A stretch of 64,000 bases of DNA from IMGVR_UViG_3300027668_000008:124001-188000, one strand, 5' to 3'. Shown: positions 3,985-63,307, numbered from the stretch's first letter. The notes: generated by a model not told the origin, from the letters alone. Numbers and translations: made by a program.

Positions 3985-4061
3985 TGGCGCACCCTACAGG
4001 ACTCGAACCTATTACCTCTGGTTCCGCAAACCAACGCTCTATCCAGATGAGCTAAGGGTGC
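3985..4061 (-). tRNA. tRNA-Arg, anticodon GCG
   Basis: GCACCCT/AGGGTGC acceptor stem, A20, anticodon arm TTGGT-TTGCGGA-ACCAG, TTCGAGT T-loop, encoded CCA. Confidence 0.9.
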
Positions 4062-4072
4062 CTTTATAGTTT

Positions 4073-4148
4073 TGGTGGAGGATACAGGGATCGAACCTGC
4101 TACCTCCTGAATGCAAATCAGGCGCTCTCCCAGATGAGCTAATCCCCC
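4073..4148 (-). tRNA. tRNA-Ala, anticodon TGC
   Basis: GGGGGAT/ATCCTCC stem with G3:U70, arm CCTGA-TTTGCAT-TCAGG, encoded CCA. Confidence 0.95.
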
Positions 4149-4181
4149 AAAACTAAATTCTTTTTGTAACATACTAATACT

Positions 4182-4210
4182 ATAATATAACATTCAACGA
4201 GTGTTGTCAA
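4182..4210 (-). promoter_or_regulatory. sigma70-type promoter for tRNA-Ala/tRNA-Arg
   Basis: TTGACA-N17-TATTAT. Confidence 0.75.
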
Positions 4211-4222
4211 GAGCCATAAAAG

Positions 4223-4312
4223 TGGCGGAGAGACTGGGATTTGAACCCAGGAAAGAGTTGCCCCTTTGCCGGTTTAGTAAACCGGTGCTTTCAACCGCTC
4301 AGCCATCTCTCC
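4223..4312 (-). tRNA. tRNA-Ser (long variable arm), anticodon ACT
   Basis: GGAGAGA/TCTCTCC stem, G73, long variable arm AAAG-GGGCAACT-CTTT, arm CCGGT-TTACTAA-ACCGG, encoded CCA. Confidence 0.88.
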
Positions 4313-4321
4313 GGAGTATTT

Positions 4322-4525
4322 TTATTTAGGTACGATTTCAAAACACTTAACTAGTGCCTGCATATCAGTCAAACCAGCCGCTTTACATTCTGCGTATAAT
4401 TTCTTTCTAGCGCCGACTACTTCGTCTGGTGCTACTTTTATACTTTGCATCCTATTTGATTTTGCATTAGGATTCATGCCACGATATCTGGTATTATGTT
4501 TATTATTTTTGTTACGATCATTCAC
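4322..4525 (-). CDS. Small basic hypothetical protein between tRNAs
   Basis: 67-aa ORF, GTG start. Confidence 0.55.
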   Translation of the reverse strand: MNDRNKNNKHNTRYRGMNPNAKSNRMQSIKVAPDEVVGARKKLYAECKAAGLTDMQALVKCFEIVPK

Positions 4526-4541
4526 GCAATTTATTTTTCTG

Positions 4542-4617
4542 TGGTGCCGCTTCCCGGATTCGAACTGGGCACCTACTGATTACAAATCAGTTGCTCTACC
4601 AAATGAGCTAAAGCGGC
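4542..4617 (-). tRNA. tRNA-Thr, anticodon TGT
   Basis: GCCGCTT/AAGCGGC stem, arm ACTGA-TTTGTAA-TCAGT, encoded CCA. Confidence 0.95.
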
Positions 4618-4695
4618 GTTGATATTATTTACCTGTTAAAATTTTCAATGTCTTATTATTGAATACAGTACAAGTATTTGTTTCATTATAACGAA

Positions 4696-4899
4696 CTATT
4701 GCTCGATTGTCAACTCTTTTTCTGCGTCTTGCCAAAAATCTTTTAACGAGTCTAATTTCTCTGTTAAGTCTTGTATTTTAATTCTTGTTTCTGCTTCTTC
4801 TTTTACATCTTCTATTAGTGGAAGATTGTCTTTCATTTCTGCTATACGCCTGGTATATTCAGATATGAGTGTCTTGTATAGTGTCTTTGATTGTTTCAT
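4696..4899 (-). CDS. Small coiled-coil hypothetical protein
   Basis: 67-aa ORF. Confidence 0.65.
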   Translation of the reverse strand: MKQSKTLYKTLISEYTRRIAEMKDNLPLIEDVKEEAETRIKIQDLTEKLDSLKDFWQDAEKELTIEQ

Positions 4900-4920
4900 T
4901 TTGTGATTATTCTTTAAAGG

Positions 4921-5817
4921 TTATGCTAGTTTGAACATTCCGCCAAAGATGTTATCAACAAATGTACTGTGGTCAATCTGCTCGTAACTTGTGCAGTTCT
5001 CGGGTAGAAACCCTCGATGCCACATATAAACAAAACTAGCAACTACACAGGCGTTAGCATAATGCCAACTGTTAAGTGTTCTTCGTCCAGGTATCAGTAA
5101 ATGACTGTGTTTTACTAAATCTTCTGTTTGATACTCTGAACTACTTGTAACCGTAGTATGGAACAATGTTTCTGTGTGCCAATCAACTTTACTAGCATCA
5201 ACGTTGTCGGTATCTGCTATCCAGTTTGTTTGTATGTCGATATTATCATCTCCTAGCCATGAATCAATTTCACTAGCGAAAAAATATTTATTTTGTAACT
5301 TAATAAGTTTAGGTTGCCCTAATACGTTATTCATTACTTCTTGGTAATCTTCTAATGACAATCCAGGTAAAGCATTTTCACCTGTTTCACTAGTTTTAGA
5401 AATTCCTGTAAAATGTTTGATAGACTTTACATTCTCGTTTACATTAACAATACGTTTAATCCACATATCCGTTGCCGCATATTGTAAATTAATATCATCT
5501 AAAATAATGTTATTGTGCGGTGCTACGTCATCTTGTAATGCAAATGTACAAAGTAACGGTATTCCGAATTCTGAACATAAGCCTACTATATTGTCATCTT
5601 CATAGTTTGGGTTTGTACAAACTACAATGTCAGCACCTCTGACAATATCATGCATTGTTAGTGTTGATGTAAATTTTCTAACATATGCTGGGTTCAAATA
5701 ATTATCACCAAAACAAGTAACTTGAATTTCATCATCGAACTGTACTGCATTAATTTCAAGTAATGTTTTTACGGCATATAAATTTTTGCCATCGCCTACT
5801 ATGTGTATATTAATCAT
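4921..5817 (-). CDS. Rossmann-fold protein, saccharopine dehydrogenase / homospermidine synthase-like (divergent)
   Basis: N-terminal IHIVGDG, DIVRGADIVVCT and CSEFGIPLL resemble the NAD(P)-binding domain of this family. Confidence 0.4.
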   Translation of the reverse strand: MINIHIVGDGKNLYAVKTLLEINAVQFDDEIQVTCFGDNYLNPAYVRKFTSTLTMHDIVRGADIVVCTNPNYEDDNIVGLCSEFGIPLLCTFALQDDVAPHNNIILDDINLQYAATDMWIKRIVNVNENVKSIKHFTGISKTSETGENALPGLSLEDYQEVMNNVLGQPKLIKLQNKYFFASEIDSWLGDDNIDIQTNWIADTDNVDASKVDWHTETLFHTTVTSSSEYQTEDLVKHSHLLIPGRRTLNSWHYANACVVASFVYMWHRGFLPENCTSYEQIDHSTFVDNIFGGMFKLA

Positions 5818-26479: not shown

Positions 26480-26745
26480 ATGCAACGATTTCTGTTGCTA
26501 GGTACGTTGCCAACCCCCACGTGCTTATTTTACTAAGCCGCTAATGCCATTTCTGGCTGATAATTGTTATTTGCAATTATAAAGTTTCTTCGCGATAACG
26601 GTGCTTAGATCCCGAGAACTCCACTAACTCTAGTAATTACCTGTCGATCCTATTCATCCCCATATGAAAAATCTGTTGTATTTGGTGGAGATGCCGGGAT
26701 TCGCACCCGGGTCCAGTTTAACTTTTGAATTGCTTCAACGTTCTA
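26480..26745 (-). ncRNA. ssrA: Circularly permuted two-piece tmRNA (alphaproteobacterial type), tag ANNNYQPEMALAA
   Basis: Acceptor piece ends with T-arm and CATCTCCACCA at 26683; 21-nt spacer; coding piece starts GGGGATGAATAGGATCGAC at 26661 (G3:U70); tag ORF 26574-26533; CCTAGCAACAGAA near the 3' end. Confidence 0.93.
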
Positions 26746-26749
26746 AGTA

Positions 26750-26780
26750 TATTTATACACTATTCACTTGACTTTGTCAA
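26750..26780 (-). promoter_or_regulatory. Hybrid sigma70 / late promoter of tmRNA
   Basis: TTGACA-N17-TATAAA, where the -10 is part of TATAAATA. Confidence 0.8.
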
Positions 26781-26865
26781 CCAAATAATATACAAATAAA
26801 GTACTAATATTAAAAATAAAAGATAAGTATTCTATAAAAGCAAAATACATCAACTAAAGGTAATT

Positions 26866-37000: not shown

Positions 37001-37184
37001 AGTAGAGATCACCATTTTTCTTTTTCCTATTGAGTACACTTTTATTCACTAACATAAATGCCAACTTTAGTTGACCTGGGCTTAACTCAGTCATTATAAT
37101 TGACTGCTTAAATTCTCCTAAAAAGTCTTCTTCTTCCTTTGTCAATGAAACTCTTGCTCCATCGGAAAACTTATAGTATGTCAT
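36978..37184 (-). CDS. Small hypothetical protein
   Basis: 68 aa, coupled to the upstream stop. Confidence 0.7.
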   Translation of the reverse strand: MTYYKFSDGARVSLTKEEEDFLGEFKQSIIMTELSPGQLKLAFMLVNKSVLNRKKKNGDLYYVKENKK

Positions 37185-38091
37185 TACTTGCCTTGTTGCG
37201 TCTTAATCCATGCTTTTGCAACAGGATTAGTATGCGGTGTTTCTGTGTATGCTTTCATTCTTCTATACATACTCAGTAATACACCCTTTAGGCTTTCATT
37301 ATTTGAATTGTCTACTACGAACATATTTCTACCAAAAAAGTTGTGGAATTTTCCAATGTTTGTTTGTACACTTTTCCACATTTTAGTAACTAGTTCGTTG
37401 GGTAATCTTCTATCTCTTTTAGCATTACGTTCTAATGCCGTATCTAAGTCAGTGTTAACAAACACCATTGCACAATCGTATCCGATTTTACGCAATTCTC
37501 CACTTAGATGTTCTATTTTGTCATAATCTTTACCGGTGCCATCTATAACTACGCCTAGGCGTCCATCTAAAAAAGATTGTTGTTTTATATCAGTTAAGGC
37601 TTTAGCACGTTGTCTTGTCGCTTGTCCGTCAGTACTAGCAAGTGCATCTGGATCTGTTAAATCAATATTGCTCTTTTTTGCTAGATACTCATAAGCATCG
37701 TCGGTGTTTATTATTTTATATCCTAAAGACACAAATGCAACATTCTTAGCAATAAAGCTCTTACCACTACCAGGACCACCTGCTAGGAATACTGCTTTAA
37801 AAATTGCGGGATCGTTTACACCTTCTTCAAGGTCAGTCAGTCTTTTTTTTTGACCTCGGTAGCAATGGATACTGTTTGTCCGGGTTTAATTTTGGAGCCT
37901 TGTCCTTGGGGTTTAGCGGATTTTGGCTTAATGGTTGGAGCATTAGGATTTGAAGTATCTATATCCATTTTCTTTAGGTCAATTTTAGTCGTAACACCTG
38001 GCTTCTTTGGATCGATAATTTCAACATTATCGCCAGCAACCTTAGTTACTTTACCTTGCATAGGTTCTTCAAATAAATCACTAATTCTCAT
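37184..38091 (-). CDS. P-loop kinase (AAA_33/Pnk-like) fused to the 84-aa upstream ORF via a -1 frameshift at A9 (37843-37851)
   Basis: Walker A in AVFLAGGPGSGKSF lies upstream of the first canonical start (GTG 37732); no ATG/GTG/TTG in frame between the in-frame TAA and Walker A; VVIDGTG and ERNAKR lid downstream. Confidence 0.7.
37837..38091 (-). CDS. 84-aa unshifted product (MRISDLFEE...)
   Basis: ORF ends AAA AAA AAA GAC TGA. Confidence 0.75.
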   Translation of the reverse strand: MRISDLFEEPMQGKVTKVAGDNVEIIDPKKPGVTTKIDLKKMDIDTSNPNAPTIKPKSAKPQGQGSKIKPGQTVSIATEVKKKD

Positions 38092-38092
38092 T

Positions 38093-38410
38093 TTAACTCC
38101 GTTTATTCAATGCTTGAACACGTTTACTTGCTGGGTTGATACGTTTAGTACGTTTTGATTTCAACTTCATTCTGGATCCAAGTTTTGCTTTAGTCATTTT
38201 TAGTTTAATACGTTTTCTTATATCAGGTGCTTTAAAACACGCACCAGGACTACTTACTATTTTACCTTTTAATCTACCAATTGAGCATCTGTACTTTCGT
38301 ACAACTTTGTTACCCGAACGGCCCCAAGCCATTTTGGTTTCATCTAAAGAAGTAGGATGTACTTCTTCGATAGGTGTATTTTCGTCGCTGAATAGTTCTA
38401 ATATAAGCAT
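38093..38410 (-). CDS. Small basic putative internal head protein
   Basis: MLILELF, LDE site, basic C-terminus; TAAATA upstream. Confidence 0.65.
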   Translation of the reverse strand: MLILELFSDENTPIEEVHPTSLDETKMAWGRSGNKVVRKYRCSIGRLKGKIVSSPGACFKAPDIRKRIKLKMTKAKLGSRMKLKSKRTKRINPASKRVQALNKRS

Positions 38411-38459
38411 AACACTACTATTTAGTTAAGTTTAATCGGTTTTAATTTTTTGTGAATTA

Positions 38460-38717
38460 CTATATGAATAAGTTGTAGGATAGTATGCCTACTGCACTGA
38501 TTAAAGAACCAATGATAGTCATACCCCACATGATAAGTTGAGATTGACGTTTTTCTCTATCTTTGACAACAGTGTCTCGGATTTCCCCAAGTACAGTTTC
38601 AATGCCGATAACTCGGCCCTCTAAATTGTCTAATTTTTCTTCCAATCGTGAATACCTCGCCGCACATAATTCTACATGGGCCTCTAGGCTTTCTTTCTCA
38701 ATTTCTCTTGTACTCAT
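38460..38717 (-). CDS. Coiled coil plus C-terminal TM protein (XhlA/holin-like architecture)
   Basis: SLEAHVELCAARYSRLEEKL coiled coil, then one TM. Confidence 0.6.
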   Translation of the reverse strand: MSTREIEKESLEAHVELCAARYSRLEEKLDNLEGRVIGIETVLGEIRDTVVKDREKRQSQLIMWGMTIIGSLISAVGILSYNLFI

Positions 38718-38737
38718 TCTCTTTTAGTTCCTGTTAC

Positions 38738-38840
38738 GCCTACCTGGGGCGGGTTGATAATTTCGGAGCCTTAATGAATGCCTTTGATTTGCCTATAAAT
38801 TGTTGCCTGTATGCCTAAGTTTGTTGCCTTAATTTTGCCT
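38738..38840 (-). repeat. Leader with eight AGGC (six AGGCA) motifs
   Basis: GCCT on the plus strand at 38738, 38768, 38780, 38791, 38805, 38813, 38826, 38837; TATAAATA at 38875-38882. Confidence 0.8.
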
Positions 38841-38926
38841 ATGTAACAAACGTTTATTACGTTTCTTACTAATGTATTTATAAAAGTCAAACAGTAGTAA
38901 AACACAAATATAATGTATAGGGTGTT

Positions 38927-39679
38927 TTACGCCTTTTTAATCTTATATTTCTTATGTACGTTTTGAATGTTCTTATCTCGGATTGCTTTGTATCCTATAA
39001 CTGCACCAACTGCCACACCTGCAATAGTTTTTGCGAATGTGTTACCAGTGTACGGACTTTTAGCATTTTGTGAAACTATACCAGTAACACTTTTGTTATA
39101 CGGTCCTGCTAAATCACTGCCTCTGGCATAATGATTAAGCATAAACCCTAAACGTGTTGCTCCTGCTTTTTGTTCATTTGGTAAAGCACGAGGCCAGTCT
39201 GAAATGATTCGTCTCATTGCAGTTAGTTTTGGATCTCTAATTTGTAGTGAACGTTCAACGGCAAGCATAGTACGTCTGTCTAATTGTGTATCTACTACAC
39301 CATTTTGTACGTTCTTTAAATATCTTTTAATTTGTGCAGTCGGAATACTGTATCCGCCTTTACGTTCCAATCCTGCAATTAAGTTATGCAAGTCTGTTGC
39401 ACCGGTTCTTACTCCGTCGAAGCCGTTGTATGACATAGTTTTCCTAGCATATGTACTTGCTTGTCCAGGATCAGTATAACGCATTGCTTGTACACCCATT
39501 AAGTGTGCATACACGTTCTTTGCAATATCTTCTTTATTTGATGTAGCGAATTGTGTTGGGTTTCTAAACAATCTTGCTTCAACTAGTTCATCGTTCATAA
39601 ATCCAAACATCTTTTGTTTAGGTTCAATTGTATGACCACCGTCCATTGCCGCCCATTCACTTGCAGTATACTTGTCCAT
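38927..39679 (-). CDS. Conserved phage hypothetical, putative virion protein
   Basis: LVE site near the N-terminus; C-terminal hydrophobic GVAVGAVIGY. Confidence 0.6.
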   Translation of the reverse strand: MDKYTASEWAAMDGGHTIEPKQKMFGFMNDELVEARLFRNPTQFATSNKEDIAKNVYAHLMGVQAMRYTDPGQASTYARKTMSYNGFDGVRTGATDLHNLIAGLERKGGYSIPTAQIKRYLKNVQNGVVDTQLDRRTMLAVERSLQIRDPKLTAMRRIISDWPRALPNEQKAGATRLGFMLNHYARGSDLAGPYNKSVTGIVSQNAKSPYTGNTFAKTIAGVAVGAVIGYKAIRDKNIQNVHKKYKIKKA

Positions 39680-39683
39680 TAAC

Positions 39684-40940
39684 TTATTTGCTCCAAGTTT
39701 TAGTTGCTGAGAAATTCAATGCATTGAATTCCATTCTATCATTTAGTTTAACTGCTCCACCGTCTATACCAAATGCTACAAATCCTTCATGGTTTGTAAC
39801 TCTGTATCCATTTTCAGTTTTTACAAATGTTCCAATTTTATCTACATTACTTAATTTACTAATTAATAATAGTTTAGCACTAATTATACGACGATACACT
39901 GCTAGTGTCAAGAGCAACGTATTACTATTGTCTGCTAAAAATTTCTTTTGTTGTTCAATTTTTTCAAAACGTTTTTGTGCCGCTGGACTTTCAGCGCCGC
40001 CTTTTAATTTTTCAACTTCTTTATTCATCTTATCATTATAATAATTCATAAAGTCTTGTAGGAACTTTGTCGGTTCACCGACTTGTTCCCCTGCTCTTAC
40101 ATTATTATTAATAAAAGGTTTAATAAACTTTGCAAATTCAGCCTGTAGTACTTGATCCATTTTAGGACCTACTTTTTTAAGTGTAGTACGCCCTGTTGCA
40201 ATAGTACCGTCTATAGCCTTTTCTTCGCTAGGTGTTAGTGTTGCAATACCGGATACATCTTTATAATTTGCGTCATCATACCATACATCTGCTGTAGGTT
40301 GTAAACCTCTAACACTGTAACCAAAATTTGCAGTCATTTCTGGTAGTGTAGCACCTGTATATTCTGTATGAAATACTATTCCGATTTTTGCTTTAGCGAC
40401 ACGTTTGCCAATAGCACTATCCACAGGAACTGCGTATGTAATAGTGTTAGGGGTAAACGTATAACAGTTGTCATCACCAACGTCTTCTGTTTTAACATCA
40501 CCTGGGCCAAAAAGGAAGTCGCCTTGTACAACTGATCCTATGCCTAATTTAGGTAATAGTTTAAACGCCATTAATAATTTTGCTTCTAGTGAAGGTTGCT
40601 CGGAATACCATTCTTTAATTTGTGCTACTGATTTAGCAACTTTAGGTGTCTTTGCATTAAACACTGATTTAGTGCCTACAAAGAATTTACTATCTTCTGG
40701 ATCTATTCCGCAAATAATTGCCGGGGCACCATCCCACTTAACAGTAACTTTACCTTCTGGTTGTCCGCCTTCTAATAAACCTTTAACTGCATCTAGATAA
40801 TTAAATGCTCTTTGGGCACCTGCGTAACCTTCATTAAAGATTAAGTCTTCAATATGTTCTAAGTGTGTGTTTTTACCTTCTGCTTCGTTAAGAATATTCC
40901 AGTAATGTGTTTTAGGTTCAAAAATTTCTTTTATAATCAT
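39684..40940 (-). CDS. ATP-dependent ligase-superfamily nucleotidyltransferase (RNA-ligase-like)
   Basis: KWDG (motif I), VGTKS (Ia), VQGDFLF (III), HEGFV (IV), AVKL (V). Confidence 0.6.
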   Translation of the reverse strand: MIIKEIFEPKTHYWNILNEAEGKNTHLEHIEDLIFNEGYAGAQRAFNYLDAVKGLLEGGQPEGKVTVKWDGAPAIICGIDPEDSKFFVGTKSVFNAKTPKVAKSVAQIKEWYSEQPSLEAKLLMAFKLLPKLGIGSVVQGDFLFGPGDVKTEDVGDDNCYTFTPNTITYAVPVDSAIGKRVAKAKIGIVFHTEYTGATLPEMTANFGYSVRGLQPTADVWYDDANYKDVSGIATLTPSEEKAIDGTIATGRTTLKKVGPKMDQVLQAEFAKFIKPFINNNVRAGEQVGEPTKFLQDFMNYYNDKMNKEVEKLKGGAESPAAQKRFEKIEQQKKFLADNSNTLLLTLAVYRRIISAKLLLISKLSNVDKIGTFVKTENGYRVTNHEGFVAFGIDGGAVKLNDRMEFNALNFSATKTWSK

Positions 40941-40941
40941 G

Positions 40942-41205
40942 TTATGCCGCTCGCTTACTTCTGGCTAAGATAGCTCTTACTTCGTCGTCTAAGTCTAGTG
41001 ATTTAATAACCATTGCTAGTGCTTCTACATCAACAGTTGCTTGTGTTACTTCTGGTGCTTGTGCTGTAGGCTCTACTGTAGGCTCTACTGTAGGCTTTGC
41101 TTTAGGTATTGCGTTTGCTTTTTGCTGGCGCTTTTTTGCTTGTTGCTTTTTACGTTGTTTACGACTTTTCTTTTCAGTTAAATCGTTTAACTCATTAAGT
41201 TTCAT
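40942..41205 (-). CDS. Small putative internal head protein
   Basis: MKLNELNDLTEK, basic stretch, PTVE repeats. Confidence 0.6.
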   Translation of the reverse strand: MKLNELNDLTEKKSRKQRKKQQAKKRQQKANAIPKAKPTVEPTVEPTAQAPEVTQATVDVEALAMVIKSLDLDDEVRAILARSKRAA

Positions 41206-41747
41206 TATGCTTTGCTCCCAGCCTTATTAAGTAGAGCATCTAATTGGGCTTTTTGCTCATCTGTTAAATTTTGTAATGTTTGTGATATATCATCTGGAAG
41301 TTTTTCAGGATTCTTTTGTTCTTCGCCTCTAATAAATCTACCAAACACTTGGTCTGCTATGTTAACTAACTGCGGATCTACTATCTTAACAATTTTCATA
41401 AAAGTGTTAGCACCTTGAAACGGAGTTTTAGGTTTTAAGTAGTAATTCTGTGATGCATATGCAACTACAAGTTTTCCAACTTTTTTAATGTTAGCATCTG
41501 AAAGTTTTAATGCAGGTATATTCAATACCTTTTCAACATCATTTTTAAACATATGTTTAAACCAATTAGCAAAGGCTTGCATTGGTTCTGCGTCAAATTG
41601 CTCAGCATTTTCAATTTCGACATCTGCGAAATTTTGTTGTGCTTTTTCATACATTCCCTTAACTTTTTTACCAAGTTCTTTTAGTTCTTGTATTTTTGCT
41701 TTGCTGTCTGTGACTCGTTTTCCAAAGTCAATTTCATCTATTCTCAT
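41205..41747 (-). CDS. Hypothetical, putative internal head protein
   Basis: N-terminus MRIDEI. Confidence 0.6.
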   Translation of the reverse strand: MRIDEIDFGKRVTDSKAKIQELKELGKKVKGMYEKAQQNFADVEIENAEQFDAEPMQAFANWFKHMFKNDVEKVLNIPALKLSDANIKKVGKLVVAYASQNYYLKPKTPFQGANTFMKIVKIVDPQLVNIADQVFGRFIRGEEQKNPEKLPDDISQTLQNLTDEQKAQLDALLNKAGSKA

Positions 41748-42074: not shown

Positions 42075-42857
42075 ATGAACTATGATTCACACCATGCAAT
42101 GCTTTCTGCCTGTGCATACACGGATCTAAACCCATCTATTGAAGCAACTTTTAGTAAAATAGGGTATAAAACCATCCATTTTTTGAATACCGATGGGGCT
42201 CAAGCATATTTGTTGAGCAATGATGACCTTATTACGATTGCTTTTAGAGGTACTGAACCTAGTCAACCTAGCGATCTTATTGCTGATGCCAAAAGTTGGA
42301 AAAGTAAGAGTAAAGTTGCAGGTAAAGTACATGATGGATTTTATGATGAAATTGAAAAGATTTGGGATGAAATTGAAGAATTTGCAAATAACAACCCAAA
42401 AAAACAAATGACTATTACCGGTCACAGTTTAGGTGCCGCGATGGCAACACTCTGTGCCGCAAGGTTACAAGATAAGTTTGAGGATTTAGCATTATATACA
42501 TATGGTTCGCCACGTGTTGGTAATAAAGAATTCATAAACAGTTGTAAATTTAAACACTATCGTTGGGTTAATAACAATGATGCGGTAACTAGAGTTCCAC
42601 CTGCGTTTATTGGTTTTAGACATCACGGTCAAATGAAATATTTAAACCATTTTGGCAATATTAGAAACGGGTTAAGTACATGGCAACGTTTCAAAGACAG
42701 GATACGAGGAAGAATTTCTGCTTGGAAAAAGTGGCAATTATTTGATGGTGCATATGATCACAGTATTAGTGATTACCATAGAAAAATTAATAAAGCACAT
42801 TTATCTAAAACAAAAGATGGTAAAGTGATACTAGACCAATTTAAACCTAAAGACTAA
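42075..42857 (+). CDS. Lipase class 3
   Basis: IAFRGTE, VHDGFY, ITGHSLGAAMA, YGSPRVGN, NNDAVTRVPP, DHSISDY; AGGAG RBS; TAAATA at 42032. Confidence 0.92.
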   Translation: MNYDSHHAMLSACAYTDLNPSIEATFSKIGYKTIHFLNTDGAQAYLLSNDDLITIAFRGTEPSQPSDLIADAKSWKSKSKVAGKVHDGFYDEIEKIWDEIEEFANNNPKKQMTITGHSLGAAMATLCAARLQDKFEDLALYTYGSPRVGNKEFINSCKFKHYRWVNNNDAVTRVPPAFIGFRHHGQMKYLNHFGNIRNGLSTWQRFKDRIRGRISAWKKWQLFDGAYDHSISDYHRKINKAHLSKTKDGKVILDQFKPKD

Positions 42858-56596: not shown

Positions 56597-57421
56597 CTAG
56601 TATTCTAATCTTTTATACATCTTTACATAAGTATCATCAATACCTAACACCGGCTGTAATGCTTTGTTCAAAATTTCGGAGTTTTGCTTACTTCTATGTA
56701 CTGCTATAATATTCACTACACCACTATTTAAGAAGATGTTTGCTCGTTGACCTTTGAAATTTGTTGGATTGTAGTTTTTAACCGGTAACCACCATAAGCC
56801 GTAATCTTTGTTTACTAATGTATTCCACAGAAACTCTACATGGGTCTTGCTATCGTTTACTTCAATAAGCATACTTGGTTTAAACTTTTCAATAGATTTT
56901 ATAGCACCTTGTATTACTTCCTTTTCGTACCCTTCAACATCTATTTTCATAAAGTCAATTTTTACAGGGTCTAGGTCATCAACAGTTACCATTTGTGATG
57001 TATGGAAAGGTCCTGCACGTTTGTTCAATACAGTGCATTCTCCATAATTACCTGGAACGTGTGGACTATACGAACTTATAAAAACCGAACTAACCTTATT
57101 ACCCAAACAGTTGTTGTACACTGTTACATTTTTAATTTGATTGTTGTGTAAATTCTTTTGTAATAATTCTCTACTAAATTCATTTGGTTCAAATGCACTA
57201 ACAAATCCTTGAAATGCGTGTTTGGCAAACCATATAGTATGTACACCAATATTAGCACCTATGTCTAATACATAATCAGTTGGTTTAACCATATGTTGCA
57301 TAATTGTGAACTCTTGTTCACAATACTCGCCATACAGATCCAAACTTTTACCAATAATAACATCATTAGTAAAGTAAGAAAACTTACCATGTTTGCATTG
57401 TGTTGTTTTAATGCTACTCAT
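56597..57421 (-). CDS. FkbM-family methyltransferase
   Basis: LDIGANIG, AFEPN, FMKIDVEGYE. Confidence 0.92.
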   Translation of the reverse strand: MSSIKTTQCKHGKFSYFTNDVIIGKSLDLYGEYCEQEFTIMQHMVKPTDYVLDIGANIGVHTIWFAKHAFQGFVSAFEPNEFSRELLQKNLHNNQIKNVTVYNNCLGNKVSSVFISSYSPHVPGNYGECTVLNKRAGPFHTSQMVTVDDLDPVKIDFMKIDVEGYEKEVIQGAIKSIEKFKPSMLIEVNDSKTHVEFLWNTLVNKDYGLWWLPVKNYNPTNFKGQRANIFLNSGVVNIIAVHRSKQNSEILNKALQPVLGIDDTYVKMYKRLEY

Positions 57422-58187
57422 TTTTATGTTCTATGTCTTCCTCTGTACACTTATCGCCGTATTGTATTTCAATTAACTTTACGTCTTCGTTACTAGGATT
57501 ATTTAACTGATGCCATGTGCCTACTGTTATATTTGTGAATTCATGCTTATTAAAAGTTTCTGTTTTAAGTAATCTACGATCCGCCGGATGTTCTGTATTA
57601 TTAGCAAGTACACCTTTTGTTACAAACCATATTTCACTTCTAAGATTATGTCTTTGGTACGACAACGTTTCTCCAGGACGTATAACAATTTCTTTTACTT
57701 TAACGTTATCGTCTCTGTATAATACTTTGTAATGACCCCAGGATTTTTCTGTTTGTTGGTTTACCCAAGATGCTAAAAAGTCACGTGAACCGTATTTCTT
57801 TTCTTCACCTACACCATAAGCAAATGTTAATCTGTCTTTAAGTGCAAAACTTTTGTGTTCGGGTGTTGTCTCGTCTGTTCTGTCTCCACCATTTGCAAAT
57901 ACGATTTCATCTTCTGGATATTTCTCTAAAAGAACTTGTATAGCATCTTTGGCAGTTCCATCTGAATCATCGAAATGAATACATTCCGATACCATGTCTA
58001 AATGTTGTATGATTGTTGTTCGAATTTCCAATGATTGAAATTCTTTACCCTTCTTGCGTCTTAACCATTCGTCACTATTAATGCCGACAATAAGTTTGTC
58101 GCCTAGTTTCTTGGCTTCGACGAAGTAGGAGATATGTCCATCGTGAATGGGATCAAAGCCTCCTGTAACTAATACAAGTTTCTTCAT
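57414..58187 (-). CDS. Cytidylyltransferase (RfaE-like) fused to a mannose-6-phosphate isomerase cupin
   Basis: GGFDPIHDGH, FANGGDR; WGHYKVL, LSYQRH..RSEIW, LIEIQYG. Confidence 0.9.
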   Translation of the reverse strand: MKKLVLVTGGFDPIHDGHISYFVEAKKLGDKLIVGINSDEWLRRKKGKEFQSLEIRTTIIQHLDMVSECIHFDDSDGTAKDAIQVLLEKYPEDEIVFANGGDRTDETTPEHKSFALKDRLTFAYGVGEEKKYGSRDFLASWVNQQTEKSWGHYKVLYRDDNVKVKEIVIRPGETLSYQRHNLRSEIWFVTKGVLANNTEHPADRRLLKTETFNKHEFTNITVGTWHQLNNPSNEDVKLIEIQYGDKCTEEDIEHKNE

Positions 58188-62517: not shown

Positions 62518-62889
62518 TTATAAATCGCCGTTTTTTCGCATATTTGCACGGATTTTAGTAGCACTAATGTCGTGTATCTCTTTACCTAAGTCATGTTCTG
62601 TAATAGTATATCCTACTCCACGCCCATAACTAATGTCTACAATATTTGGAACATTGATAATATTGTACTCTTTACGATACTCGAATCCTTCGAAACTTAA
62701 TCCATTAATGATGTTTTTACGGACTGTATCAATATCAAATGGATTATCGTCTACACCCTGTACATTACGAATCATAATGCAAACTTGCCCGGTTTGTGCT
62801 AGTGCTTTTTTAAATAATGCTGTGTGGCCATCATGCCACGGTTGCCAGCGACCCAACATCTGAACTGTTGGCTTCTTACTATCAAACAT
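62518..62889 (-). CDS. Cytidyltransferase-like nucleotidyltransferase
   Basis: LGRWQPWHDGH (HxGH), ISATKIR. Confidence 0.85.
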   Translation of the reverse strand: MFDSKKPTVQMLGRWQPWHDGHTALFKKALAQTGQVCIMIRNVQGVDDNPFDIDTVRKNIINGLSFEGFEYRKEYNIINVPNIVDISYGRGVGYTITEHDLGKEIHDISATKIRANMRKNGDL

Positions 62890-63307
62890 TGTTTCTGTTC
62901 ATATAGTTTAGTATTACTTCAGATAATTGTGCGTGTGTATCGTCAAACCATTCACGTACATGGTAATTAACCTTGTTAGGCATTTGAAACATTCTGTTAG
63001 TATCCTCGTACTTGCCAATTTTAATTGTATCCATCCAAACTGTATAATCAGCATTAAACTCTTTTCTTGCTGTTTCAGTAGGACAAATAAAATCACAAAC
63101 TGCGATTTTATCAGACATAACTACTCCATCTGCTAAATGTTTCATGCGTTGTGCTTGTCTTATTCTTCCCTCAGGACTAAAATCCCAATCGTCATATTTT
63201 TTGCGTACTACATCGGCATTGATGTGTACTGCACCAATTAAGTTAGCAAATGGTTTTGCTAGTGTTGTTTTACCACTTCCAGGTAACCCAAAGATTAAAA
63301 TTTTCAT
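62882..63307 (-). CDS. Adenylylsulfate (APS) kinase-like protein
   Basis: GLPGSGKTT, NADVVR, WDFSPEGRIRQA, DFICPT. Confidence 0.85.
   Translation of the reverse strand: MKILIFGLPGSGKTTLAKPFANLIGAVHINADVVRKKYDDWDFSPEGRIRQAQRMKHLADGVVMSDKIAVCDFICPTETARKEFNADYTVWMDTIKIGKYEDTNRMFQMPNKVNYHVREWFDDTHAQLSEVILNYMNRNNV

What the first reader, a model, noticed from the sequence alone, without database searches (positions are those of the whole stretch)
37184..40940. Possible virion-delivered RNA repair pair: Pnk-like kinase plus ligase-like nucleotidyltransferase
39684-40940 shows ligase-superfamily motifs in order (KWDG, TKS, QGD, EGFV, VKL) and no OB domain, as in RNA ligases. The frameshifted protein has the Walker A and RxxxR lid of AAA_33/T4 Pnk kinases. 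Both carry the putative head-targeting motif and L-x-E sites. T4 repairs PrrC-cut tRNA with Pnkp plus Rnl1. Packaging such enzymes would give repair before phage expression, and fits the altered tRNAs (inference).
Basis: inference. Interest (0 to 1): 0.75.

Follow-up and report, generated by a model that had tools for sequence, protein, structure and literature searches.

The report
Head-packaged ligase-like and kinase enzymes
A giant marine T4-like phage encodes a new kind of ligase-like enzyme and a polynucleotide-kinase-like enzyme (made through a conserved frameshift), and both carry the short leader that T4 uses to load proteins into its head, so they are probably injected with the DNA as a ready-made break-repair kit.

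Summary
ORF 39684-40940(-) is Pfam DUF6267, a large uncharacterised phage family. Its invariant residues are the ligase motifs (K68-x-D-G, Q-G-D141, E385-G-x-V, K398). In the second-look structure comparison, 49 of the 50 best matches to its AlphaFold model are ATP-dependent ligases, RNA ligases first. It has no OB domain, and a helical domain sits between motifs IIIa and IV.

The kinase is a P-loop kinase nearest to PSTK, bacterial Pnkp and T4 Pnk. It can only be made by a -1 shift at an A9 run (37843-37851) from an 84-codon upstream ORF. The shift is conserved, and both frames are under purifying selection, so it is programmed and not a pseudogene.

Both families carry N-terminal leaders like T4 Alt or T4 internal proteins. 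An [LI]-x-E site lies exactly at the leader/domain border. The genome encodes a gp21-type prohead protease. Delivery in the virion is therefore plausible but unproven.

RNA versus DNA substrate, any tRNA link and real packaging are untested. No 3'-end-healing enzyme was found. The two genes are also linked and fused to cytidylyltransferase-like genes and lie near leader-bearing adenylate kinase genes, which keeps a nucleotide-metabolism reading alive.

Verdict: partly supported. This is a new variant of known kinds.

The parts
39684..40940 (-). 418-aa DUF6267 protein: a divergent member of the covalent nucleotidyltransferase (ATP-dependent ligase) superfamily, with no OB domain
40887..40940 (-). 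Predicted leader of the ligase-like protein, residues 1-18 (MIIKEIFE...ILNE), ending in L-N-E before A19. This is the putative capsid-targeting propeptide.
   Evidence: Residues 1-23 have pLDDT below 50. The family consensus has [LIVM]-x-E within 14 residues of the HLEH motif in 237 of 246 members. It resembles the N-terminus of T4 Alt.
40728..40739 (-). Motif I, K68-W-D-G71. K68 is the predicted nucleotidyl-accepting lysine.
   Evidence: K68, D70 and G71 are invariant in alignment A1.
39849..40232 (-). Helical domain (residues 237-364) inserted between motifs IIIa and IV
   Evidence: Secondary structure of the model. Ligase matches align to model residues 22-412 on both sides of this domain.
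39747..39788 (-). Motif IV (E385-G-F-V) and motif V (K398-L-x-x-R402)
   Evidence: E385, G386, V388 and R402 are at least 90% conserved; K398 is invariant.
37837..38091 (-). 84-codon zero-frame ORF. It is the N-terminal targeting module (leader MRISDLFEE plus a small beta domain) and ends 4 nt after the A9 run.
   Evidence: It is colinear with the N-terminus of the in-frame 302-aa homologues P0142 and P0143. dN/dS is 0.10 against the relative L020.
37843..37851 (-). A9 run (T9 on the + strand): the -1 recoding site, by RNA-polymerase slippage or ribosomal A_AAA_AAA slip. It yields ...VKKKRLTDLEE...
   Evidence: Sequence. The run is identical in 8 metagenome contigs, in an independent DNA run, and in a relative whose flanks have dS of 1.0-1.3.
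37821..37865 (-). 45-nt block identical between the window and the diverged relative L020. Its flanks can form an 8-bp hairpin around the A run.
   Evidence: It is the longest identical run in the region. The hairpin appears in both the MFE and centroid folds, but the overall folding energy is not significant.
37187..37843 (-). Kinase reading frame (-1 relative to the 84-codon ORF): a P-loop kinase of the Pnk/PSTK/Kti12/zeta clade. The predicted protease site L-E-E|G lies at 37822/37823.
37757..37780 (-). Walker A GGPGSGKS. It lies upstream of any in-frame start codon.
   Evidence: Between the window and L020, the 23 codons from G(VNDP) to F differ by 6 synonymous changes and 1 conservative change.
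37409..37429 (-). Lid motif R138-N-A-K-R142-D-R144 (RNxxR, as in T4 Pnk and PSTK)
   Evidence: N139, R142 and R144 are invariant; R138 is at least 90% conserved. The PSTK alignment covers this stretch.
38093..38410 (-). 105-aa basic protein with the leader MLILELFSDE. It belongs to the same leader-bearing gene cluster.
   Evidence: No family match.
40942..41747 (-). Two further leader-bearing ORFs: 87 aa (MKLNELNDL) and 180 aa (MRIDEIDFG)

Best explanation
The stretch encodes two enzymes of a capsid-delivered set found in marine T4-like myophages.

(1) DUF6267 is a divergent ATP-dependent ligase. It has an RNA-ligase-like nucleotidyltransferase core, a helical domain inserted between motifs IIIa and IV, and no OB domain. 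K68 is the predicted adenylate acceptor.

(2) The second enzyme is a polynucleotide-kinase-like P-loop kinase. It is made only when RNA polymerase or the ribosome slips by one base at a conserved A9 run. The slip fuses the kinase to an 84-residue N-terminal targeting module.

Each protein begins with a leader like those of T4 Alt or the T4 internal proteins. The leader would take the protein into the prohead core. The gp21-type protease would then cut after [LI]-x-E: after E18 of the ligase-like protein, and after L-E-E just before GVNDP of the kinase. The mature enzymes would enter the cell with the DNA.

Once inside, and before any phage gene is expressed, the kinase would phosphorylate 5'-OH ends and the ligase would seal breaks in nucleic acid.

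Shown here: motif conservation, fold class, the conserved recoding site with selection on both frames, the leader and [LI]-x-E pattern, the presence of the protease gene, and the gene linkage. Inferred: packaging, cleavage, adenylylation, the polynucleotide substrate, and whether that substrate is RNA or DNA.
For: Ligase-like protein:
- Invariant KxDG, QGD, EGxV and K398.
- Model pLDDT 88.
- Ligase NTase domains dominate the structure matches, ordered NgrRnl 8.2, then Trl1-LIG and TbREL1 7.6-7.7, T4 Rnl1 and Rnl2 7.1, and DNA ligases 5.6-6.0.
- ESM-feature neighbours are mostly PF09414 RNA_ligase clusters.

Kinase:
- Pfam and PHROG matches.
- The top structural neighbours act on nucleic acids: PSTK, CthPnk, a Mucorales kinase, T4 Pnk, Kti12 and Pnkp1.
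- Invariant N-x-D and RNxxR.

Recoding:
- A9 is present in 8 contigs, in an independent DNA run, and in a relative with dS of about 1.
- It lies inside a 45-nt identical block.
- dN/dS is 0.10 upstream and 0.28 downstream.
- The P-loop segment has 6 synonymous changes against 1 replacement.
- Homologues are in frame.

Packaging:
- T4 leaders were read from the T4 genome.
- The family-wide leader and [LI]-x-E pattern is about 100-fold enriched at N-termini over internal Met positions in 80 related loci.
- The motif clusters in the window.
- The same motif starts the small ORF between the likely portal and protease genes, read by position and size only.
- The genome has a gp21-type protease.
- The neighbouring cytidylyltransferase family (T4-GC190) was detected in S-SM1 virions (PMC3037559).
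- A 'minor head protein' PHROG contains this kinase domain.

Linkage:
- HTVC008M has DUF6267, then a 170-aa ORF, then the kinase, then CTP_transf+DUF5824.
- The kinase lies downstream on the same strand in 19 of 80 loci.
- Fusions of these domains exist.
Against: - No sequence-level link to any ligase family: PDB phmmer and hmmsearch found none, and hhalign against T4 Rnl2 gave probability 0.1%.
- Motif III has Asp where ligases have Glu. Motif V has one Lys, not K-x-K.
- No 3'-end-healing enzyme was found in the window and no PNK3P match in the genome. A kinase plus a ligase alone cannot repair the 2',3'-cyclic-phosphate/5'-OH breaks made by anticodon nucleases.
- T4-GC71 (DUF6267) was not flagged in the three published cyanophage virion proteomes. 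The cultured cyanophage orthologues have no leader at all.
- The gene sits in the replication module, next to the gp41 and gp61 genes.
- Foldseek ranks dephospho-CoA and adenylate kinases as high as Pnk.
- Zeta_toxin scores as well as AAA_33.
Confidence: 0.45

Rival explanations
1. Nucleotide or cofactor metabolism cargo. The kinase phosphorylates a small molecule, such as nicotinamide riboside, dephospho-CoA or a sugar nucleotide. It would work with the linked cytidylyltransferase-like (NMNAT/PPAT-type) enzymes and adenylate kinases to restore NAD+, CoA or ATP pools. DUF6267 would nucleotidylate something other than a nucleic-acid break.
For: - DUF6267 is fused or adjacent to CTP_transf_like and DUF5824.
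- One ORF carries CTP_transf, the kinase and DUF5824 together, an arrangement like NadR or CoA synthase.
- Adenylate kinase genes with the same leader lie in the same neighbourhoods.
- The top Foldseek matches of the kinase include dephospho-CoA and adenylate kinases.
- Zeta_toxin, a UDP-GlcNAc kinase family, is the best Pfam match.
Against: - The RNxxR lid matches T4 Pnk and PSTK.
- Every informative structural neighbour of DUF6267 is a polynucleotide ligase.
- Fusions may reflect co-delivery and not one pathway. DUF6267 is also fused to Cu/Zn superoxide dismutase.
Confidence: 0.2
2. DUF6267 is an ordinary intracellular replication or repair DNA ligase of marine T4-like phages, the functional stand-in for T4 gp30. 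The N-terminal motifs would have nothing to do with packaging.
For: - It is present in all 16 cyanomyophages of Sullivan et al. 2010. That paper's 'non-cyanophage core' list, as reproduced in PMC5349666, includes gp30.
- HTVC008M, P-HM1 and S-PM2 have no PF01068 and no PF09414 match.
- The gene lies beside the gp41, uvsX and gp43 genes. A roughly 460-aa ORF cluster, not annotated here but probably that helicase, lies in 57 of 80 loci.
- The cyanophage orthologues lack a leader and were not seen in virions.
Against: - This genome also carries a canonical ATP-dependent DNA ligase (PF01068, E 1.6e-17).
- RNA ligases outrank DNA ligases structurally, and there is no OB domain.
- Most family members do carry a T4-type leader with [LI]-x-E.
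- The two readings are not exclusive. The same enzyme could be cytoplasmic in some lineages and packaged in others.
Confidence: 0.2
3. The kinase is a decaying pseudogene split by a homopolymer error or mutation, so there is no functional pair.
For: The reading frame is interrupted in the assembly. No RNA contig bridges the A run in three metatranscriptomes.
Against: - The same A9 is found in 8 assemblies, an independent DNA run and a diverged lineage.
- There are no stops in about 217 codons, although dS is about 1.3; dN/dS is 0.28.
- The P-loop segment, which has no start codon of its own, shows 6 synonymous changes against 1 replacement.
Confidence: 0.05

Closest known systems
ATP-dependent RNA ligases: Naegleria NgrRnl (Rnl5), fungal Trl1 ligase domain, T. 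brucei REL1, T4 Rnl1 and Rnl2
   Different: No detectable sequence similarity. The helical domain is inserted inside the NTase domain, between motifs IIIa and IV, and not appended. Motif III is Q-G-D. Motif V has a single Lys plus Arg. There is an extra near-invariant H-L-E-H-x-E-D motif at the start of the domain. Most members carry a capsid-targeting-type leader.
T4 Pnkp with Rnl1 (tRNA repair after PrrC), and bacterial Pnkp/Hen1
   Same: A P-loop 5'-kinase of the same clade (Walker A, catalytic Asp, RNxxR lid) encoded close to a ligase.
   Different: The kinase has no HAD or metallophosphoesterase 3'-healing domain, and no such gene was found nearby. The T4 enzymes are made after infection and are not packaged. 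The substrate here is unknown.
T4 internal head proteins IPI, IPII and IPIII, and Alt (capsid targeting sequence plus gp21 cleavage)
   Same: Short N-terminal leaders. T4 IPII/IPIII read MKTYQEFIAE and T4 Alt reads MELITELFDE. Here the leaders read MRISDLFEE and MIIKEIFE, and family members read MKSFKQFLxE. An [LI]-x-E site comes before a small residue, and the genome has a gp21-type protease.
   Different: The cargo would be nucleic-acid or nucleotide enzymes, not restriction inhibitors or an ADP-ribosyltransferase. Packaging has not been shown experimentally for either protein.
Programmed slippage at A runs (dnaX of Thermus, IS elements) and -1 frameshifts in phage genes
   Same: A run of 9 A followed by a zero-frame stop, with a -1 frame that encodes the functional domain. 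The site is conserved at the nucleotide level.
   Different: Here the shift joins a head-targeting module to an enzyme. The mechanism (RNA polymerase or ribosome) and its efficiency are unknown.

Membership tests
Covalent nucleotidyltransferase (ATP-dependent ligase / capping enzyme) superfamily | Motif I KxDG with a conserved catalytic lysine | tested here: met
   K68, D70 and G71 are invariant in 60 sequences with 32-91% identity to the window protein.
Covalent nucleotidyltransferase (ATP-dependent ligase / capping enzyme) superfamily | Motifs III, IIIa, IV and V in canonical order on beta strands | tested here: met
   QGD (139-141), a conserved F162/Y169 and H191/Y194 region, EGxV (385-388) and K398 all lie on predicted strands. 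Deviations: Asp replaces Glu in motif III, and motif V has a single Lys.
Covalent nucleotidyltransferase (ATP-dependent ligase / capping enzyme) superfamily | Nucleotidyltransferase fold | tested here: met
Covalent nucleotidyltransferase (ATP-dependent ligase / capping enzyme) superfamily | Detectable sequence or profile similarity to a known ligase family | tested here: not met
   The only Pfam match is DUF6267. PDB phmmer and hmmsearch found no ligase. hhalign against T4 Rnl2 gave probability 0.1%.
Covalent nucleotidyltransferase (ATP-dependent ligase / capping enzyme) superfamily | Formation of a covalent enzyme-NMP intermediate | not testable with these tools
   This needs an adenylylation assay. 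The ATP docking job was not folded.
RNA ligase as opposed to DNA ligase | No OB domain; closest structures are RNA ligases; seals RNA | tested here: inconclusive
T4 Pnk-type 5'-OH polynucleotide kinase | Walker A, catalytic Asp after strand 2, and an RNxxR lid | tested here: met
   GGPGSGK[ST], N45-x-D47 and N139, R142, R144 are invariant.
T4 Pnk-type 5'-OH polynucleotide kinase | Closest relatives are polynucleotide kinases and not small-molecule kinases | tested here: inconclusive
T4 Pnk-type 5'-OH polynucleotide kinase | Fused 3'-phosphatase domain (bifunctional Pnkp) | tested here: not met
   The protein is a kinase domain only. The genome has no PNK3P match.
T4-type internal head protein (capsid targeting sequence plus gp21 processing) | N-terminal leader resembling the T4 CTS or Alt leader, followed by [LI]-x-E at the border of the folded domain | tested here: met
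   The pattern is about 100-fold enriched at N-termini over internal Met positions.
T4-type internal head protein (capsid targeting sequence plus gp21 processing) | gp21-type prohead protease encoded by the same phage | tested here: met
   PF03420 at E 3e-29, at genome 234942-235391, inside the 211-aa ORF 234798-235433. Neighbouring ORFs sit where T4 has its portal, scaffold and capsid genes; this is read from position and size only.
T4-type internal head protein (capsid targeting sequence plus gp21 processing) | Presence of the processed protein in purified virions | not testable with these tools
   Literature only. T4-GC71 was not flagged in the S-SM1, S-PM2 or Syn9 virions, but those orthologues lack a leader. 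The neighbouring T4-GC190 was detected.
Programmed -1 recoding site | A conserved slippery run, with purifying selection on both the upstream and the shifted frame | tested here: met
Programmed -1 recoding site | Slipped transcripts or a frameshifted protein observed | tested here: inconclusive
   The metatranscriptome contigs of three runs all stop short of the A run, while a DNA contig spans it. Coverage is low.

The most novel reading that the evidence does not exclude
Abundant marine T4-like phages load their heads with a kit of enzymes, each tagged with a T4-type capsid-targeting leader. The kit includes a new RNA-ligase family (DUF6267), a Pnk-like kinase, adenylate kinase, cytidylyltransferase-like enzymes and HAD-like phosphatases. 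The phage injects them with the genome, so that damage to nucleic acids or nucleotide pools is repaired before any phage gene is expressed. In this lineage a conserved A9 slippage site sets how much kinase is made.
Probability: 0.3. Interest if true: 0.85.

Novelty: new variant of a known kind. Interest (0 to 1): 0.7.

Why it matters
- DUF6267 is a very large family. It has at least 2,542 clusters at 50% identity and is a core gene of cyanomyophages, yet it has no assigned function. Placing it in the ligase superfamily gives a direct, cheap biochemical test.
- If the leaders really are capsid-targeting sequences, internal head proteins of T4-like phages would include nucleic-acid repair or nucleotide enzymes, not only anti-restriction factors. 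That would be a new layer of the phage-defence contest in the ocean's most abundant myophages.
- The conserved A9 site is a clean new example of programmed recoding. It couples a packaging module to an enzyme.
- The family may also answer an old puzzle: which ligase cyanomyophages use, given that they lack gp30.

Tried and rejected
- Sequence searches of DUF6267 against PDB, with a single sequence and with a profile, returned only antibody light chains and coiled coils.
- Foldseek against PDB and AFDB-SwissProt found nothing significant; ligases appeared only at E 0.2-0.7.
- hhalign of the family profile against T4 Rnl2 gave no match.
- The ESM Atlas structure search returned only DUF6267 clusters.
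- Docking ATP with complex prediction was not folded by the tool, so it is no evidence either way.
- A literature search for 'DUF6267' found no papers. 'Capsid targeting sequence' together with 'cyanophage' gave only a T4 review.
- Reads: only assembled contigs were available. The RNA contigs stop short of the A run, so slippage could be neither shown nor excluded.
- RNA folding around the slip site is not more stable than shuffled sequence, z -0.37.
- I considered 'DUF6267 is simply the missing gp30' and kept it only as a rival, because this genome has its own PF01068 ligase.
- I considered a sequencing error at the homopolymer and rejected it.
I rebuilt it without that row.

Full report
Context. 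The window is bases 124001-188000 of a 306,714-bp viral metagenome record that CheckV rates 87% complete. Its nearest cultured relatives at the DNA level are T4-like marine myophages: cyanomyophages, Pelagibacter phage HTVC008M and the Methylophilales Melnitz phages. Nearly all genes in this part lie on the minus strand. Upstream of the finding (in the direction of transcription) lie a DnaB-type helicase and a weakly primase-like ORF. Ribonucleotide reductase genes lie further downstream.

The ligase-like protein. ORF 39684-40940(-) matches Pfam DUF6267 end to end (E 8e-108) and the function-unknown phrog_455. The family is large. More than 8,000 proteins passed in the 90%-identity collection. 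It has 2,542 clusters at 50% identity and matches in 470 phage genome records, nearly all marine T4-like phages, every one annotated as hypothetical. It is 'T4-GC71' of Sullivan et al. 2010, present in all 16 cyanomyophages compared there.

In a 60-sequence alignment the invariant residues are K68, D70, G71, G140 and K398, plus G78, P81, F86, F87, Y169 and G196. Near-invariant residues include K91, Q139, D141, E385, G386, V388, L399 and R402.

The AlphaFold2 model is confident (pLDDT 88, pTM 0.85). Residues 1-23 are disordered. A long helix follows, then a beta-rich half (64-223), a helical domain (237-364) and a second beta segment (370-399) that carries motifs IV and V.

I conclude that DUF6267 is a divergent member of the covalent nucleotidyltransferase superfamily. 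It has no OB domain and an unusual internal helical domain. The RNA-over-DNA ranking is only suggestive.

Walker A lies upstream of any in-frame start codon. The frame is entered from the 84-codon ORF 37837-38091 by a -1 shift at the A9 run 37843-37851, giving ...VKKKRLTDLEEGVNDP.... Homologues of 302-306 aa are in frame and colinear. A 74%-identity relative (identity measured on DUF6267) has a single 371-aa ORF.

This is not an assembly artefact:
- The same A9 is present in eight metagenome contigs.
- It is present in an independent DNA run.
- It is present in a lineage whose DUF6267 is 87% identical and whose kinase is 58% identical.

Between the window and that lineage, dS is about 1.0 in the upstream ORF and 1.3 in the kinase frame, with dN/dS of 0.10 and 0.28. 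There are no stops. The longest identical stretch in the region is a 45-nt block centred on the A run. In the 23 codons from GVNDP through the P-loop I count six synonymous changes and one conservative replacement. The shifted frame is therefore translated and selected, and the site is a programmed recoding signal.

A run of nine A is a classic RNA-polymerase slippage site, and A_AAA_AAA could also allow a ribosomal -1 slip. I could not distinguish the two. Contigs from three metatranscriptomes all end before the run, but coverage is low. The flanks can pair into an 8-bp hairpin around the run, without statistical support.

Head targeting. I read the T4 leaders from the T4 genome: MKTYQEFIAE in IPII and IPIII, MKTFKEF...ITE in IPI, and MELITELFDE in Alt. 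The window proteins start MIIKEIFE, MRISDLFEE, MLILELFSDE, MKLNELNDL and MRIDEIDFG, which is closest to Alt. Many family members from other phages start MKSFKQFLxE or MKNFKDYLAE, which is closest to the internal proteins.

In the kinase family, 114 of 120 proteins have [LIVMF]-x-E immediately before the conserved G[VI]NDP. In DUF6267, 237 of 246 leader-bearing proteins have [LIVM]-x-E within 14 residues of the first conserved motif. In 80 related viral loci, a strict T4-like pattern starts 52 of 982 ORFs, against 3 of 5,586 internal Met positions. The hits are concentrated in DUF6267 and in the genes just downstream of it. Within this genome the looser motif is enriched and clustered (P 1.5e-7). 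It also starts the 71-aa ORF between the likely portal and prohead protease genes, which is where T4 has gene 67; that reading rests on position and size only. A gp21-type protease is present.

The published record is mixed. The neighbouring cytidylyltransferase family (T4-GC190) was found in S-SM1 virions, but T4-GC71 was not flagged. The cultured cyanophage orthologues start directly at the conserved domain, with no leader. HTVC008M has a short leader ending in L-V-E. Packaging is thus well motivated for leader-bearing lineages like this one, but it is not shown.

Neighbourhood. DUF6267 usually follows a roughly 460-aa ORF cluster that I take to be the gp41-type helicase; the cluster was not annotated (57 of 80 loci). 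It is usually followed on the same strand by the kinase (19 of 80 loci) and by cytidylyltransferase-like proteins (at least 31 of 80). HTVC008M has DUF6267, then a 170-aa ORF, then the kinase, then CTP_transf+DUF5824. Fusions exist: DUF6267+CTP_transf+DUF5824, CTP_transf+kinase+DUF5824, and DUF6267+Cu/Zn superoxide dismutase. Adenylate kinase (Pfam E 2e-40), HAD-like DxDDT proteins and DUF6321 proteins with the same leaders occur in these neighbourhoods. This supports the idea of a set of co-delivered enzymes. It also means that linkage alone does not prove the ligase and the kinase act in one pathway.

What argues against a simple tRNA-repair story:
- No 3'-phosphatase or cyclic phosphodiesterase was found in the window, and the genome has no PNK3P match.
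- The genome has no canonical RNA ligase, but it does have a canonical ATP-dependent DNA ligase just upstream of the window.
- In cyanomyophages, which lack gp30, DUF6267 could be the DNA ligase.

I therefore rank 'capsid-delivered kinase plus ligase for nucleic-acid break repair, substrate undecided' first at 0.45. The nucleotide-metabolism and intracellular DNA-ligase readings follow at about 0.2 each.

Novelty. I found no paper that mentions DUF6267, and none that links capsid-targeting sequences to cyanophage or pelagiphage enzymes. RNA repair by Rnl, Pnk and HAD enzymes in large phages is known (PMC7824862). So are T4 internal proteins (PMC3012670). What is new is the combination: a new ligase family, T4-type leaders on enzymes, and a conserved recoding site.

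Noticed in passing
window 26481-26799 (-): The phage encodes a permuted, alphaproteobacterial-type tmRNA: Rfam alpha_tmRNA at 107 bits and tmRNA_permuted at 113 bits. ARAGORN gives the tag ANNNYQPEMALAA. This hints at an alphaproteobacterial (SAR11-like) host.
   Followed up: partly
window 3985-4617 (-): A cluster of four tRNA genes: Arg-GCG, Ala-UGC, Ser with anticodon ACU (unusual) and Thr-UGU. All four score as tRNA in Rfam.
   Followed up: no
genome C1:119885-120430 (about 3.6 kb before the window start): A canonical ATP-dependent DNA ligase (PF01068, E 1.6e-17, 374-aa ORF) coexists with DUF6267 in this phage. HTVC008M, P-HM1 and S-PM2 have no PF01068 or PF09414 match.
   Followed up: partly
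L079:9516-10235, L063:5785-6537, L073:9539-10351; L049:4801-5388: In related viral contigs, HAD-like proteins (DxDDT motif; only a weak Pfam HAD match) and adenylate kinases (Pfam ADK 2e-40) lie in the DUF6267 neighbourhood and start with the same T4-type leader (for example METFGEFLTE, MKSFRDFIFE).
   Followed up: partly
ESM Atlas clusters; P0302, P0357; L040:5537-8674: Unexpected fusions: DUF6267 with Cu/Zn superoxide dismutase, DUF6267 with CTP_transf_like and DUF5824, and CTP_transf_like with a RimK ATP-grasp domain and a Zn-protease domain.
   Followed up: no
window 42075-42857 (+): A class-3 lipase gene (Lipase_3, E 4e-29) lies on the opposite strand, between the helicase gene and the leader-bearing cluster. 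It is conserved at this position in relatives.
   Followed up: no
window 62518-63307 (-) and 57414-58187 (-): Further nucleotidyltransferase-fold genes without leaders. One is a 123-aa HxGH protein directly followed by a 141-aa P-loop kinase. The other is a 257-aa cytidylyltransferase-like protein.
   Followed up: no
L012 (S-PM2) 3992-5771: In S-PM2 the DUF6267 match is split over two annotated genes. The C-terminal half is joined to the 'cytidyltransferase' S-PM2p142. This may be a frameshift or a fusion in that genome.
   Followed up: no
window 38460-38717 (-) and 38927-39679 (-): Two proteins between the kinase and the ligase-like gene have predicted C-terminal hydrophobic segments (85 aa and 250 aa). 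They have no family match and no leader, and their role is unknown.
   Followed up: no
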